This document shows, piece after piece, positions 8,163 through 19,940 of a DNA stretch of 64,000 bases. Position numbers and translations under genes: made by a program. Positions within the stretch are counted from its first letter, which is position 1; each line of letters opens with the position of its first letter. The notes beneath the pieces were generated by a model, which was not told the origin of the DNA, searched no databases, and worked only from the letters and a program-made list of their open reading frames with translations. The stretch is taken from the IMG/VR virus record IMGVR_UViG_3300044712_001462, positions 1-64,000 of that record. One strand, 5' to 3'.

Positions 8163-8480
8163 TTAAAACCCGATCATAAACCTGCGTTCTTGCGTTCGTT
8201 TTCGCTCTAATTCCTCTTTCACCGAGCGAATGTATTCACGGCTTGGGCGATAGAAGCCCAGCTTTTCCAGCGCGCGGTATATCTTGCTTACCGTCTTATC
8301 GCCGATGTTTGGAATCCCTAGTAGCTCTTCAGGGCGACTCAGTAAGAGGTCGCGAATCGTCCGCACAACCGGCGGGTGACTAGGATTTTCTAGAGCATTT
8401 GTTGTCCGAACATCAAGACCAAGAACTTGCACAGGCTCATCTAAGAGAGCCTGTTGTTCGCGTGTCAATCCTTCAAGCAT
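8163..8480 (-). CDS. stand-alone RNA polymerase alpha C-terminal-domain protein
   Basis: LGLDVRTTNALE...TIRDLL...EELLGIPNIGDKTVSKI matches alpha-CTD (L.LSVRS.NCL...I.DL....LL...NLG.KS..EI). Confidence 0.85.
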   Translation of the reverse strand: MLEGLTREQQALLDEPVQVLGLDVRTTNALENPSHPPVVRTIRDLLLSRPEELLGIPNIGDKTVSKIYRALEKLGFYRPSREYIRSVKEELERKRTQERRFMIGF

Positions 8481-9534: not shown

Positions 9535-9917
9535 GGAGTTTCAGAACTCGGAGACAGCTCAATACCCAGTAGCTCAGCAGCCTTCCTCACATCAGCCAGG
9601 GTGACACTACTCAGCTCTATCCGATAGCCATAAGTCTTTTGGTGAATCTCCGACACTAGACGCGCAAACTCTACCCTGTCGTTGTAGTGCTGCTCGGAGT
9701 CATACAAAGTGCCCGGAGATGAATACTCACCTCCATCAACCTGTCGCCAGTATTTGTCTGTCTTGTCAAAGCGATGACCGTTAGACAAGGTACACCACTT
9801 CCTACCCACCTTTGTCACCGTTACTGGTCCAGATGTATTGAACCTCTGAGCACCAACAAACCAGAACGTGTCACCTACTTTTACATCCACTACTATCTCT
9901 CCCCCGAACTCTAGCAA
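9528..9917 (-). CDS. hypothetical protein (SH3-like beta-barrel)
   Basis: VKVGDT...VTVTKVGRKW motif. Confidence 0.7.
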   Translation of the reverse strand: MLEFGGEIVVDVKVGDTFWFVGAQRFNTSGPVTVTKVGRKWCTLSNGHRFDKTDKYWRQVDGGEYSSPGTLYDSEQHYNDRVEFARLVSEIHQKTYGYRIELSSVTLADVRKAAELLGIELSPSSETPR

Positions 9918-10621
9918 GCTACCGACTCGTCGCAGTACACCAACGGTTCCAACACCTCGTTGATCTCTCCATACGACGGCAGAATATCACTGCGCAACTC
10001 CTCGCCGATAATGAACGTCCCATTCCGCTCAACATCACTTAGATCAGTAGCCCAGTTCTTATCGATCGAATGCAGCATCTCGTGCTGATCCGCCCGGCCT
10101 TTACCGTGCATCTCTTTGTGTGAGAAGTAGTGCCCACAGTACATGGTTACGGAGTTCCGTTCCCAGTCCTTCGCTCTCCAGAGAAAGTAGTTGACTACCT
10201 CCTCTCGAGGAATATTAAACGCACGGGCATCAAATGCAGCCATCAGCTGGCTATCCTCGCACACTCCCCAAATGAAGCGGTTAAACGTAGCCGTAAACAG
10301 ACTAGCTGTGATTGATTCCAGCTTGCTCTTCACGTAGCCGAACCAACCCTCTGTCTGATGTGTGTCATAGTCTGTCAGCAAGAAAGACGCCTCATCACTC
10401 TGGATGTACGCCGCCTTAAATCCTTGCATCTCTTTGGACACCTGCTGGGCTGAATCGCGCATAGCATCAATTATCAGCTCGGAAAACGGCCTATCAAACG
10501 ACCGCGTATACGTGTGAAAAGCTCGCCCATCCACCCGTATAATCACAGGCATCCGCCGCACCAGCTGATGTCGACTTGGAAACTCGTAATTCGCCTTCAT
10601 TCTTGCGCCAATGTCCATCAT
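9911..10621 (-). CDS. thg1: tRNA(His) guanylyltransferase Thg1-like protein
   Basis: IRVDGRAFHTYT, YIQSDEAS, FDARAF, NYFLWR..DWERNS motifs. Confidence 0.93.
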   Translation of the reverse strand: MMDIGARMKANYEFPSRHQLVRRMPVIIRVDGRAFHTYTRSFDRPFSELIIDAMRDSAQQVSKEMQGFKAAYIQSDEASFLLTDYDTHQTEGWFGYVKSKLESITASLFTATFNRFIWGVCEDSQLMAAFDARAFNIPREEVVNYFLWRAKDWERNSVTMYCGHYFSHKEMHGKGRADQHEMLHSIDKNWATDLSDVERNGTFIIGEELRSDILPSYGEINEVLEPLVYCDESVAC

Positions 10622-18217: not shown

Positions 18218-18386
18218 TTTGTGCCTTTGCTTCCTCGATACACTTAGGACACACCAGGAGCTCATCCAGATAAGCCCAGCCCGTAAGCATGACAGTTGGG
18301 TCGCTATACAACCAAGTTTCCTCATGTGTCGTATGCGACTCCCCACAAATCTCACAAACGAACAAATTGATTTGGTAAATAGACAT
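18210..18386 (-). CDS. small zinc-finger protein (58 aa, below track cutoff)
   Basis: Hand translation MSIYQINLFVCEICG...LVCPKC, AAGGAG RBS. Confidence 0.6.
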   Translation of the reverse strand: MSIYQINLFVCEICGESHTTHEETWLYSDPTVMLTGWAYLDELLVCPKCIEEAKAQNE

Positions 18387-18389
18387 CTC

Positions 18390-19349
18390 TTACTCCTTAA
18401 CTAACGAAGAACACTCACTTCTCCCAGACTTACCAACAAACGCCCCAAACATCGCTTTGAGTCGAACCTTAGGCGCTAGAGCCTTGGCCCGAAGAAAAGG
18501 CTCAAGAGGCTGATCCTCTTCAAACAGCTCCCCAGGCATCCAGTCCTCTGGATACGCACACGCCTCAGCAATCAGCTTCGCTACGTCTAAGCGATGAGAC
18601 ATCGCATCATGAATACAGCGATAGTAATGTCGATGCTCATTCTTCCTCTGTTTGGCTGGAACATCCTTCGTTCTACCCAGAACAAGCACAGCGCGCTGCG
18701 CTAACCACTTCTCTCCATCTGGGATCACGGTGAACAGACTCTGGGCTCCTATGGCGTATCCTGGGATCTTGGACTTATGGAGACTCGGAAGATGCCGGAG
18801 GAGCTTAGCCCCCTCTCTTGGGGATCGAACCCTATACGTCCGGTTTTCCAGTGTGTACTCCACAGATAGATCCCAAGGCCTCACATCCTTCCCAAGGTCT
18901 CTGAGACAAGTCTTGTAGTTGGTCAGAGGATCGAGGATCCGGTGCGCAATCGGAGCCACTACATTTCGTTGCCAGCAGAAGCAACAGATAAACTGAAACT
19001 TACAAGTCCTGGTGACTGGATAAATCGGTGTGTCAGCCGGATGGCAGTTCATGATGAAGTAGTAGTCCGCTGGTTTGATCAGCTTCTTACTCGCCAGATG
19101 GGCGCACAGATAACGCTTCTCAGCTACCAGACGGTTGAAAGCTGTTTTGGTTGCACTACGCGTCAGGATCTCCCGTTCCGTCATTCTGGGCAGAGCCCTA
19201 CGCAGAGCCTGGGCGTAAGGAGTCTTCCGTAGCTCCTGAACAGTGAAATACACGCGCTCCTTAAAACCAGCCTCATGATCTGCTCGATAAGCAGAAAGGT
19301 GTCGAGTGGTATCTCGACGTTTCGACTTCTTCACTCCTCCGTACCTCAT
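18390..19349 (-). CDS. basic protein with Rep/IS91-like 4-Cys zinc motif; candidate origin-binding protein
   Basis: MNC-x13-CKFQFICCFCWQR; Arg/Lys-rich; directly beside the repeat region. Confidence 0.6.
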   Translation of the reverse strand: MRYGGVKKSKRRDTTRHLSAYRADHEAGFKERVYFTVQELRKTPYAQALRRALPRMTEREILTRSATKTAFNRLVAEKRYLCAHLASKKLIKPADYYFIMNCHPADTPIYPVTRTCKFQFICCFCWQRNVVAPIAHRILDPLTNYKTCLRDLGKDVRPWDLSVEYTLENRTYRVRSPREGAKLLRHLPSLHKSKIPGYAIGAQSLFTVIPDGEKWLAQRAVLVLGRTKDVPAKQRKNEHRHYYRCIHDAMSHRLDVAKLIAEACAYPEDWMPGELFEEDQPLEPFLRAKALAPKVRLKAMFGAFVGKSGRSECSSLVKE

Positions 19350-19940
19350 TTAAAAAAACAACACTTCTCCCACAGGACAATCAAAAAACCTGGGACTTAT
19401 CCTCACTCTCTCTCCTATAGAGAACCGTTAAGACATATACACCGTCTTCGGTGTGTATATGAATTGAGAAAAAACGCTTAGTAAGGTAAGTAGATTAGAT
19501 TCAACCAGCCAAAGACAGCAGATAATTTACGCACATAGGATCCTCTTGGCGTAAATTTGAAAAAACATCACATCGCCTATCCCATCTCAAGAAAAAAACC
19601 TGGGACTTATCCTCACTCTCTCTCCTATAGAGAACCGTTAAGACATATACACCGTCTTCGGTGTGTATATGTTAAAAGAAAAGTTCCTTAGTTTAGTAAG
19701 TATTAAGCTTAGTCTTTCATTGTTGTTCGCTCTTCCGAGGCGGAAGAGAAACAGCCATGAAAGCGATTTCTGAGTCCGCGAACCCTGGTTGATCGCTTCG
19801 CTCTCAACCTTAGGGCTCGCAAACTCTCTGACACAAGGTGTCTGCGCTTTTGTTCAAAGGGAGAAGAAAGGTGCTGTGAGGAGCGAATCAGGTCTCTTAT
19901 TTACGTAGATAGGATTCTATCTGGGTAAATTCTGAACACC
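19350..19940. other. candidate replication origin region
   Basis: Largest non-coding gap, A-tracts, direct repeats, hairpins 19731-19747 and 19778-19820, apparent C>G to G>=C skew change. Confidence 0.5.
19383..19671. repeat. two perfect 79-bp direct repeats (19383-19461, 19593-19671), 210-bp period, each ending in a hairpin
   Basis: AAAAAACCTGGGACTTATCC...CATATACACCG-TCTT-CGGTGTGTATATG identical in both copies. Confidence 0.97.

What the first reader, a model, noticed from the sequence alone, without database searches (positions are those of the whole stretch)
19383..19705. Two perfect 79-bp repeats with terminal hairpin and a patchily conserved extension
The copies are identical, 210 bp apart, and each ends in CATATACACCG-TCTT-CGGTGTGTATATG. 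For ~32 bp beyond them only islands are kept (AGAAAA-n4-CTTAGT-n3-GTAAGTA) with variable bases between. The unit is too long and too few for CRISPR. It could be duplicated origin/initiator sites, or two small RNAs with a constant scaffold and a variable part, which would make them guide candidates for the RAMP/Nop proteins.
Basis: partly seen in the sequence, partly recalled or inferred. Interest (0 to 1): 0.6.

Follow-up and report, generated by a model that had tools for sequence, protein, structure and literature searches.

The report
Duplicated hairpin units beside Rep-like gene
Two identical 79-bp hairpin-bearing DNA units lie in the largest non-coding gap of an uncultured 224-kb phage, just upstream of a gene for a distant, atypical relative of rolling-circle replication initiators, so they are most likely that protein's origin or operator sites and not CRISPR-like guide RNAs.

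Summary
The core 19383-19461 equals 19593-19671 (79/79, spacing 210). Each core ends in the stated hairpin and is followed by about 31 bp in which only AGAAAA, CTTAGT and GTAAGTA are kept. It is the longest exact direct repeat in the 224,528-bp phage genome and has only two copies. An independent, about 2.5% diverged strain carries the same arrangement.

The units lie in the genome's largest (591 bp) and most AT-rich gap. On the sense strand they sit 34-350 nt upstream of ORF 18390-19349 (P0001). P0001 is a near-orphan. A confident model (pLDDT 84) resembles Rep_1 (pC194/pUB110-type) initiators. It has an invariant Cys4 motif and an invariant Tyr-Pro at the catalytic-Tyr position, but no HUH histidines.

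In relatives 20-36% identical, the gap upstream of the homologous gene also carries repeats. These are specific to each lineage, often contain hairpins, and vary in copy number.

My best reading (about 0.4) is that the units are DNA sites (origin and/or operator) for this Rep-like protein. The main rival (about 0.3) is tandem promoter/leader modules. Small RNAs are possible but unsupported. The guide-RNA/RAMP idea has no support: no Cas-like hit among the 20 nearby proteins scanned, no Rfam match and no real variable segment. This is a new variant of a known kind, of moderate interest.

The parts
19350..19940 (.). Non-coding gap that holds everything below. It is the largest gap of the 224.5-kb genome, with GC 0.42 against about 0.52 overall.
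19383..19461 (.). Unit 1, the perfect 79-bp core. Read on the - (gene-sense) strand it runs hairpin, TCTTAACGGTTCTCTATA, polypurine tract GGAGAGAGAGTGAGGA (19415-19400), TAAGTCCCAGG, T6.
19593..19671 (.). Unit 2, the perfect 79-bp core, identical to unit 1. Its A/T run is one base longer (19592-19598).
19434..19461 (.). Hairpin of unit 1 (11 pairs with a 2-nt bulge, 4-nt loop).
19644..19671 (.). Hairpin of unit 2.
19462..19492 (.). Patchy extension of unit 1. On the - strand it reads TACTTAC-n3-ACTAAG-n4-TTTTCT-n5 and lies 5' of the hairpin. The island pattern is typical of protein-binding sites.
19672..19702 (.). Patchy extension of unit 2, with the same islands and different spacers.
19524..19557 (.). 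Palindrome P1 (AATTTACGC...GCGTAAATT) in the spacer between the units.
19897..19932 (.). Palindrome P2, related to P1 (32 of 52 alignment columns identical), 9 nt after the stop of the upstream - strand ORF.
19728..19748 (.). Further GC-rich hairpin CTCTTCCG-AGG-CGGAAGAG.
18390..19349 (-). P0001, 319 aa. It has a Rep_1-like fold, a Cys4 motif (C102, C116, C122, C125), an invariant Y266-P267 and no HUH histidines. The true start may be GTG at 19253, because the homologues begin there.
19350..19406 (-). Possible mini-ORF of unit 1: AGGAG, 5 nt, then GTG, 18 codons. Its TAA abuts the ATG of P0001. Unit 2 has a 9-codon version at 19587-19616. Status uncertain.
   Evidence: read from the sequence

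Best explanation
The two units are cis-acting DNA sites of an origin/operator-type control region that serves the protein encoded immediately downstream (P0001). P0001 is a very remote relative of Rep_1 rolling-circle replication initiators that lacks the HUH histidines.

Inferred mechanism: the protein recognises the short conserved islands (TACTTAC, ACTAAG, TTTTCT on the sense strand) beside an extrudable 11-bp hairpin. It then melts or nicks there, using the family's invariant tyrosine, or simply loads there, to start DNA synthesis and/or to control its own promoter. The old duplication provides two such sites 210 bp apart. The 79-bp cores are kept identical by gene conversion between the copies.

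Shown: the repeat anatomy, its uniqueness in the genome, the position next to the gene, the Rep_1-like fold and motifs of the protein, and the recurrence of lineage-specific repeats upstream of homologous genes.

Inferred: binding, nicking and origin function.
For: (1) Position. The units lie 34-350 nt upstream of P0001 on its sense strand. In pC194 and pUB110 the double-strand origin lies about 180-190 nt upstream of rep on the sense strand.

(2) P0001 is Rep_1-like. ESM-Atlas neighbours by features and by structure carry PF01446. The AF2 model from 19 homologues has pLDDT 84 and pTM 0.83. It matches Rep_1 clusters at TM 0.58/0.55 over 236-242 residues. The top PDB matches are HUH Rep nuclease domains: SIRV1 ORF119 at Z 6.2, vientovirus Rep at Z 5.2, then nanovirus, circovirus, parvovirus B19 and Helitron at Z 4-4.7. 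BFVD gives hits at E 1e-6, and the one named related hit is a microvirus replication initiator. Motif level: the family's C-x5-CPFCW-x-R resembles pC194's C-x4-CPVCAWR; P0001 EACAY-P resembles pC194 EMAKY (E210/Y214); RLxxxGxL resembles RLISYGGLL. The only hhalign alignment puts Y266 on the catalytic Tyr.

(3) Classical origin signature: the largest and most AT-rich gap of the genome, holding five strong hairpins and two repeat families.

(4) Recurrence. Upstream gaps of homologues carry their own repeats: L003 2x109 nt (97%), L004/L007 2 or 3 x 36-nt hairpin units, L016 2x35 and 2x22 nt, L008 12-mers in both orientations plus a 19-bp inverted repeat and a (TA)n tract, L012 3x13 nt. In 5 of 9 lineages the longest direct repeat beats every shuffle, against 6-11 nt in the 37 other gaps of this genome. 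Sites in both orientations (L008, L017) fit double-stranded DNA recognition.

(5) Gene neighbourhood. The family sits in a conserved replication/recombination module, RNase H ... P0001 ... SbcD/SbcC. In a different element (L017) it sits next to a primase-like 889-aa protein and an integrase.

(6) The units are unchanged in a strain about 2.5% diverged in the flanking genes.
Against: The HUH histidines that define classical Rep_1 nucleases are absent from the whole family; Arg/Lys occupy that strand. Nicking by the usual chemistry is therefore doubtful.

Sequence-profile support is not significant (hhalign probability 1.7%; no PHROG or NCBIfam hit). Structural Z-scores of 5-6 are in the range the tool warns can reflect a common fold.

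The pC194-type nick consensus CTTGATA is not in the units.

The GC-skew step lies at about 18.3-18.5 kb, at the 3' end of P0001, and not at the repeats. It is also seen in L003 and L007 but not in more distant relatives.

Perfect identity of 79 bp is more than any binding site needs, so it needs an extra assumption (gene conversion).

Two active rolling-circle origins in direct orientation would be expected to delete the 210-bp interval.

Nothing here separates 'origin' from 'operator/promoter'.
Confidence: 0.4

Rival explanations
1. Tandem promoter/leader modules acting at the level of transcription and translation. Each unit would supply a promoter for a non-sigma70 or phage-modified RNA polymerase, with the conserved islands as its elements. 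It would also supply a structured 5' leader: a hairpin, then a CUCU/AGAG stem that hides a Shine-Dalgarno-like polypurine tract, then a mini-ORF. Together the modules would drive and tune expression of P0001 and the long - strand gene block behind it.
For: 260 of 303 genes are on the - strand, and the gap heads a block with distinct composition. In L003 the gap opens with a strong intrinsic terminator, so a promoter must follow. P0001-family genes have no Shine-Dalgarno sequence of their own. A polypurine tract (GGAGAGAGAGTGAGGA in the window, GGAGAGAGAAGGA in L003, GGAGAGGGGGAA in L004) followed 5-9 nt later by a start codon is the one feature shared by the three closest lineages. In the window the mini-ORF's TAA abuts the ATG of P0001. 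The CUCU-loop-AGAG stem shows one compensatory change between the window and L004. Two cDNA-labelled runs have their only contigs on the 1741-nt stretch inside the gap.
Against: No sigma70-like promoter is found in the window gap or in the L003 gap. The islands recur nowhere else in the genome, so they are not a general phage promoter. The mini-ORF peptides are not conserved, and coupling to the main gene exists only in the window. The tool itself rates the cDNA runs as 'probably DNA', and two fragments falling in the gap by chance has p of about 0.1. Repeats in both orientations in L008 and L017 fit DNA recognition better.
Confidence: 0.3
2. Two copies of a small non-coding RNA gene. This includes the first reader's version: a constant scaffold plus a variable part that guides RAMP/Nop-like proteins.
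For: The units are compact, carry a stable terminal hairpin and end in a T run on the - strand. The + strand fold is better than shuffles, z -2.4 to -2.8. Local contigs were found in cDNA-labelled runs.
Against: No Rfam family matches even at E 10. No hairpin precedes the T run in a way that would make an intrinsic terminator; only the internal hairpin scores, and it has a poor tail. No promoter was found. The 'variable' part is 12 scattered bases, not a guide-length segment. There are no PADLOC/Cas hits in the 20 neighbouring proteins scanned. The unit sequence is not conserved in relatives, whereas the position next to the Rep-like gene is. GGA (CsrA-site) motifs are not enriched.
Confidence: 0.1
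3. A functionless duplication: a segment copied by slippage or unequal recombination and homogenised by gene conversion, tolerated in a non-coding gap.
For: Repeat copy number varies between otherwise identical relatives, 2 copies in L004 and 3 in L007. The phage encodes recombination functions.
Against: Both copies persist unchanged in a diverged strain. The extension keeps discrete islands while the bases between them have diverged, which indicates selection. The same kind of repeat recurs upstream of homologous genes in lineages only 20-36% identical.
Confidence: 0.1
4. Assembly artefact, a collapsed or expanded repeat.
For: A 79-bp exact repeat is longer than the k-mers of short-read assemblers. 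No raw reads were available.
Against: Independent contigs from other samples join copy 1, the spacer and the start of copy 2, and join the left flank to copy 1. The two extensions differ, so the copies sit in distinguishable contexts.
Confidence: 0.02

Closest known systems
Double-strand origin (dso) of pC194/pUB110-type rolling-circle plasmids with their Rep_1 (PF01446) initiator
   Same: The cis element lies 100-200 nt upstream of the initiator gene on its sense strand. It combines a binding part with a hairpin-capable part, as described for a dso with bind and nick sites (PMC5714925). The protein shares the Rep_1 fold, the Cys-rich CP.C.WR motif, the E-x3-Y-P tyrosine helix and the RL...G.L tail.
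   Different: There are no HUH histidines. There is no CTTGATA nick consensus in the units. The site is present twice in direct orientation. The replicon is a 224-kb tailed phage, not a 3-5-kb plasmid. Profile similarity is not significant.
pMV158 origin: a nic locus hairpin plus a distant bind locus of direct repeats for RepB (PMC1851628)
   Same: An initiator that contacts two separate DNA regions in one origin, with a hairpin plus direct repeats tens of bp apart.
   Different: RepB is a Rep_2 HUH enzyme. Its repeats are 11-bp iterons, not 79-115-bp units. Nothing here shows binding.
Iteron-type phage origins such as SPP1 oriL/oriR: direct repeats plus an AT-rich unwinding element bound by gp38 (PMC6316719)
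   Same: Direct repeats in an AT-rich tract in one of the longest intergenic regions, next to replication genes. Two copies of the origin sequence sit in one phage genome.
   Different: SPP1's two origins are 13 kb apart, and gp38 is not Rep-like. The units here are much longer than iterons and each carries a hairpin.
Phage T7 primary origin: tandem promoters phi1.1A/phi1.1B followed by an AT-rich region (own knowledge, not checked here)
   Same: Tandemly duplicated transcription-type units at the head of a gene block that double as an origin. This would reconcile the origin and promoter readings.
   Different: No promoter could be identified here, and there is no evidence of transcript-primed synthesis.
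CRISPR array
   Same: Direct repeats with a palindromic part, separated by unique sequence.
   Different: There are two copies only. The repeat is 79-115 bp with a spacer of about 95-131 bp, no cas genes were found nearby, and the repeat is imperfect at one end.

Membership tests
Rep_1 / HUH rolling-circle initiator (for the adjacent protein P0001) | HUH motif: two metal-binding histidines on a central beta-strand | tested here: not met
   The strand aligned by order and spacing to pC194 NPHFHVLIAV reads W.V.RR.L.LV in the family. No conserved His pair is present in 19 sequences.
Rep_1 / HUH rolling-circle initiator (for the adjacent protein P0001) | Catalytic tyrosine on the helix after the sheet | tested here: met
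   Y266-P267 is invariant in all 17 sequences that cover it, and sits at the C-terminal edge of helix 249-263 in the model. The only hhalign alignment places it on pC194 Y214. E262 (equivalent to E210) is kept only in the three closest members.
Rep_1 / HUH rolling-circle initiator (for the adjacent protein P0001) | Rep_1 fold | tested here: met
   TM 0.58/0.55 over 236-242 residues to PF01446 clusters. The top PDB matches are Rep nuclease domains at Z 6.2 and 5.2, but Z is below the tool's safe level of 8.
Rep_1 / HUH rolling-circle initiator (for the adjacent protein P0001) | Significant sequence or profile match to the family | tested here: not met
   hhalign probability 1.7%, E 0.03. No PHROG, NCBIfam or PDB sequence hit. 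No Pfam domain on record for homologues.
Rolling-circle double-strand origin (for the repeats) | Nick-site consensus of the family (CTTGATA for the pC194 group) | tested here: not met
   It is absent from both units. Only CTTGAG occurs, once, just outside unit 2, and similar pentamers in L003 and L004 are at chance level.
Rolling-circle double-strand origin (for the repeats) | Site-specific nicking and covalent Rep-DNA adduct; ssDNA intermediates | not testable with these tools
   This needs biochemistry or strand-specific read data. The single read-laying run returned contigs only and showed no joints.
Iteron-type origin | Multiple direct repeats plus an AT-rich region adjacent to the initiator gene | tested here: met
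   Two unit copies and two palindrome copies lie in a gap of GC 0.42 against 0.52, next to P0001. Binding is untested.
CRISPR array / guide RNA locus | Three or more regularly spaced 23-50-bp repeats with unique spacers and associated cas genes | tested here: not met
   Two copies of 79-115 bp. No Cas/RAMP hit in the 20 neighbouring proteins scanned.
Small RNA gene | Own promoter and terminator, discrete transcript, or a match to a known RNA family | tested here: inconclusive
   No Rfam match. No sigma70-type promoter and no convincing terminator. Contigs from cDNA-labelled runs cover the region but are rated 'probably DNA'.

The most novel reading that the evidence does not exclude
An HUH-less, tyrosine-bearing Rep_1-like enzyme of a jumbo phage initiates at one hairpin unit and terminates at the other. 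This would spin out a 210-nt single-stranded DNA circle, or multicopy ssDNA, carrying the P1 palindrome. It would be a phage-made DNA minicircle with a regulatory or counter-defence role. A milder version is that this Rep-like family, with arginines in place of the metal-binding histidines, is the long-sought origin-nicking initiator of a whole clade of uncultured jumbo phages.
Probability: 0.07. Interest if true: 0.85.

Novelty: new variant of a known kind. Interest (0 to 1): 0.45.

Why it matters
To my knowledge (not checked here), the replication origins and initiators of most jumbo phages are unknown. Here a specific, testable pair is proposed. One half is a conserved near-orphan protein family with a Rep_1-like fold, an invariant tyrosine and a Cys4 motif, but no HUH metal site. 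The other half is the repeat- and hairpin-rich gap that always precedes its gene. If the pair is an origin and initiator, it would extend rolling-circle-type initiators to 200-kb tailed phages and show an HUH fold working without its histidines, or recycled as a DNA-binding regulator. If it is only a promoter/leader region, it is an ordinary though unusually elaborate control region.

Tried and rejected
1. CRISPR or guide RNA: rejected (two copies, no Cas-like hit among the 20 nearby proteins scanned, no guide-length variable segment).
2. Known RNA family or tRNA: none.
3. CsrA-sponge or CsrA-regulated leader. The phage encodes a CsrA homologue at 8006-8146 and the units have GGA motifs, but GGA is not enriched in any of seven upstream gaps (z of 1.1 or less), so I dropped this.
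4. General phage promoter motif: the islands and other unit sub-motifs occur nowhere else in intergenic DNA. Sigma70-type scans are empty.
5. Close relatives of the DNA: no blastn hit in 50,697 phage records and no exact hairpin match in IMG/VR. P0001 peptide patterns found nothing in IMG/VR, and tblastn against the phage records found nothing.
6. The word-index protein search found only the protein itself. The exhaustive search was needed and gave 9 remote relatives.
7. The single-sequence AF2 model was useless (pLDDT 36). Foldseek against PDB gave nothing.
8. GC skew as an origin marker is ambiguous. The step is about 1 kb away, at the 3' end of P0001.
9. Coding reading of the units (+ strand ORFs 19275-19481 and 19557-19691 share KKPGTYPHSLSYREPLRHIHRLRCVY). 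I judged this spurious: wrong strand for this genome, no Shine-Dalgarno sequence, a TTG start, and one ORF overlaps P0001 antisense. It was not searched further.
10. Mobile mini-element (MITE/REP-like): only two copies, both in this gap.
11. Shared short motifs across lineages (CTTGA, TGTCATTC, TTTTTGAC, CATAT) are at or near chance expectation by my estimate and serve as leads only.

Full report
**Setting.** The window is the first 64 kb of a 224,528-bp IMG/VR virus record that CheckV rates complete. It is an uncultured jumbo phage. PHROG hits include a large terminase, a baseplate wedge protein, SbcC/SbcD, a helicase and RNase H. Its terminase is at most about 33% identical to any cultured phage, and there is no DNA match in 50,697 phage records. 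By a simple ORF map, 260 of 303 genes lie on the - strand. Runs holding the sequence come from rhizosphere, activated sludge, groundwater and wastewater.

**The observation.** It holds exactly.
- 19383-19461 and 19593-19671 are identical over 79 bp, 210 bp apart. Each ends in CATATACACCG-TCTT-CGGTGTGTATATG.
- Similarity continues for 31 bp, in which AGAAAA, CTTAGT and GTAAGTA are kept and the 12 bases between them differ.
- It is the longest exact direct repeat in the genome. No third copy exists even with many mismatches allowed.
- The longest internal repeat in each of the 37 other gaps of 150 nt or more is 6-11 nt.
- The hairpin folds at -8.4 kcal/mol as DNA on either strand, z about -4.5.
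- In run X3, a strain about 2.5% diverged in the flanking genes, one contig spans copy 1, the spacer and the first 30 nt of copy 2. It has two changes, both in the spacer. Contigs from X6 and X8 cover 19300-19488 and 19468-19642.
- These are assembler contigs, not reads, and 19643-19769 was not covered. The duplication is therefore independently supported but not read-verified.

**Anatomy of the region.** The units lie in the gap 19350-19940. This is the largest non-coding stretch of the genome and has the lowest GC (0.42 against about 0.52). Almost all genes, including both neighbours, are on the - strand. Read in that sense, the gap holds, in order:
- the stop of a 61-codon ORF;
- palindrome P2 (19932-19897);
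- a GC hairpin (19748-19728);
- unit 2;
- palindrome P1 (19557-19524; 32 of 52 alignment columns identical to P2);
- unit 1;
- 33 nt later, the ATG of a 319-codon ORF (P0001, 19349-18390).

In the same sense each unit reads TACTTAC-n3-ACTAAG-n4-TTTTCT-n5, then the hairpin, then TCTTAACGGTTCTCTATA, then GGAGAGAGAGTGAGGA, then TAAGTCCCAGG and T6-7. All five hairpins fold far better than shuffles.

**The neighbouring protein.**
- P0001 has no PHROG, NCBIfam, PADLOC or PDB sequence match. In the 5.8-billion word search it finds only itself. That justified the exhaustive search.
- The exhaustive search gave nine relatives at 20-36% identity. Pattern scans added nine loci.
- The alignment shows invariant C102, C116, C122, C125 and W126 (NCPP...C-x5-CPFCW-x-R) and an invariant Y266-P267.
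- A model built on 19 sequences is confident (pLDDT 84, pTM 0.83).
- It matches ESM-Atlas clusters of Rep_1 (PF01446) at TM 0.58/0.55 over about 240 residues (the Atlas's own model gave the same lead).
- Against 48,161 PDB chains the two best matches are Rep nuclease domains: SIRV1 ORF119 at Z 6.2 and vientovirus Rep at Z 5.2. Nanovirus, circovirus and B19 Reps and the Helitron transposase follow at Z 4-4.7, among other ferredoxin-like folds. The tool warns that Z below 8 can be generic.
- BFVD gives E 1e-6 matches without names, and a microvirus replication initiator further down the list.
- Reading pC194 RepA from the plasmid record shows the same motif order and similar spacing. SCKNRFCPVCAWRKA corresponds to the family's Cys motif. 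EMAKY (E210/Y214) corresponds to P0001 EACAY. The Rep_1 tail RLISYGGLL corresponds to RLxxxGxL.
- hhalign finds only that last region, with Y266 on the catalytic Tyr, at a non-significant probability of 1.7%.
- The defining HUH histidines (pC194 NPHFHVLIAV) are replaced by W.V.RR.L.LV throughout the family.
- I therefore call P0001 Rep_1-like in fold and in some motifs, but not a demonstrated member. Whether it still cuts DNA is open.

**Comparative evidence.**
- The gene keeps its neighbourhood across relatives: RNase H, one to three small genes, a long gap, the P0001 homologue, then an RNA-polymerase alpha-CTD-like protein, CsrA, SbcD and SbcC. In this genome the alpha-CTD-like and CsrA genes lie about 10 kb further on (8166-8480 and 8006-8146).
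- One distant homologue (L017) sits instead next to an 889-residue primase-like protein and an integrase.
- The gap upstream of the homologue is repeat-rich in most lineages, each with its own sequence:
  - L003 has two 109-nt units, 97% identical and 159 nt apart. Each carries a CACACAC/GTGTGT hairpin, a polypurine tract and a GTGTTAACGTTAACAC palindrome. The second unit ends 10 nt before the ATG.
  - L004 and L007 are otherwise identical but carry two and three 36-nt units with the hairpin GGGGGT-CTACAT-ACCCCC.
  - L016 has 2x35 nt and 2x22 nt palindrome units. The last one contains the start codon.
  - L008 has a 12-mer in direct and inverted copies, a perfect 19-bp inverted repeat and a (TA)n tract.
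  - L012 has three 13-mers spaced 22-31 nt apart.
- In 5 of 9 lineages the longest direct repeat exceeds every shuffle.
- A repeat set that changes with the protein but keeps its place next to the gene, and that in some lineages occurs in both orientations, is what cognate DNA-binding sites look like.

**Best explanation (confidence about 0.4).**
- The units are cis-acting sites for P0001: an origin, an autoregulatory operator, or both. In plasmid and phage systems these two functions usually overlap.
- The arrangement mirrors pC194 and pUB110, whose double-strand origins lie 180-190 nt upstream of rep on the sense strand. [quoted passage not shown]
- pMV158, with a nic hairpin and distant direct repeats (PMC1851628), is a precedent. 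So is SPP1, with two origins of direct repeats plus an AT-rich element in its longest intergenic regions (PMC6316719).
- The contrast between a perfect 79-bp core and a patchy extension implies an old duplication whose core is homogenised by gene conversion. This is an inference.
- Weak points: no HUH, no CTTGATA in the units, a GC-skew step about 1 kb away, and no binding data.

**Rivals.**
- (a) Tandem promoter/leader modules, about 0.3.
  - For: the one feature shared by the three closest lineages is a polypurine, Shine-Dalgarno-like tract followed 5-9 nt later by a start codon of a tiny ORF. In the window the 18-codon version stops at TAA directly before the ATG of P0001, and P0001-family genes have no Shine-Dalgarno sequence of their own. 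L003's gap begins with a strong terminator, so a promoter must follow.
  - Against: no sigma70-type promoter, no genome-wide recurrence of the islands, and non-conserved peptides.
- (b) Two small RNAs, about 0.1. Nothing supports this beyond compactness. The contigs from two cDNA-labelled wastewater runs fall in the gap, but the tool rates those runs as probably DNA and chance is about 0.1.
- (c) A functionless duplication, about 0.1.
- (d) An assembly artefact, about 0.02.
- The guide-RNA/RAMP idea is unsupported.

**Novelty and verdict.** The repeat is real and non-random. I read it as part of an elaborate control or origin region belonging to a previously undescribed protein family: Rep_1-like fold, no HUH histidines, conserved in a clade of uncultured jumbo phages. 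That makes it a new variant of a known kind (initiator gene plus upstream repeated and hairpin sites), of moderate interest. The protein family and the recurrent repeat architecture are the more valuable finds. The most novel reading still open is Rep-type initiation at one unit and termination at the other, releasing a 210-nt ssDNA circle. I give it about 7%.

Noticed in passing
window 18390-19349 (-) and loci L003, L004, L006-L013, L016, L017: P0001 defines a near-orphan protein family: about 10 representatives among 1.8 billion, plus a few metagenome loci. It has a Rep_1-like fold, a Cys4 motif NCPP..C-x5-CPFCW.R and an invariant Tyr-Pro, but Arg/Lys where the HUH histidines should be. It keeps a fixed place between RNase H and CsrA/SbcCD in uncultured jumbo phages.
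   Followed up: yes
window 8006-8146 (-) and 8166-8480 (-): The phage encodes a CsrA homologue (38-47% identical to those of relatives) and an RNA polymerase alpha-subunit C-terminal-domain-like protein (64-79% identical). The pair is adjacent and conserved in relatives, which suggests manipulation of host transcription and translation.
   Followed up: partly
window 9911-10621 (-): Strong match to PHROG 4717, a tRNA-His guanylyltransferase (Thg1-like), E 9e-75. ARAGORN found no tRNA gene in the window.
   Followed up: no
window about 18300-18500; whole genome: There is a sharp GC-skew step, from about -0.25 to about -0.08 on the + strand, at the 3' end of P0001, although genes on both sides are on the - strand. 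The strongly skewed domain runs from about 96-124 kb through the record ends to 18 kb. The same step occurs just downstream of the homologue in L003 and L007. Whether the cause is replication or expression class is unresolved.
   Followed up: partly
window 19524-19557 and 19897-19932: A second local repeat family: two related palindromes (AATTTAC..ATAGrATyCT..GTAAAT), found nowhere else in the genome. One lies between the two units and one lies right after the upstream ORF's stop.
   Followed up: partly
window 19350-19406 (-) and 19587-19616 (-); L003 1281-1304 and 1440-1463: A mini-ORF lies behind a strong AGGAG in every unit. In the window the 18-codon copy ends in a TAA that abuts the ATG of P0001. 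In L003 one of the three differences between the two units changes GTG to TTG, which keeps a start codon.
   Followed up: partly
L004 598-653 and L007 2363-2454: Two otherwise identical contigs differ by one 36-nt hairpin unit (2 against 3 copies) directly upstream of the P0001-homologue start. This is a live copy-number polymorphism.
   Followed up: partly
window 19349 / 19334 / 19253 (-): The start of P0001 is uncertain. Homologues begin near residue 30. A GTG at 19253 preceded by AAGGAG would remove the 32-residue N-terminal extension and lengthen the non-coding region to about 690 nt. The public gene call (P0002) starts at residue 6.
   Followed up: no
G000 132232-132756 and 208319-208918 (outside the window): The next-longest exact repeats of the genome (60 and 47 nt, 76 kb apart) probably mark a pair of paralogous genes.
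   Followed up: no
window 19300-19642, runs X6 and X8: In two wastewater libraries labelled RNA-Seq cDNA, the only contigs on the 1741-nt stretch lie on the repeat region (189 and 176 nt, k-mer depth 7 and 10), with none on the P0001 body. This could mean local transcription or just duplicated DNA fragments.
   Followed up: partly
L005 1995-3002: In one distant relative the P0001 homologue has no upstream gap. It directly follows a nucleotide-sugar epimerase gene (PHROG 540), so the repeat-rich gap is not universal.
   Followed up: no
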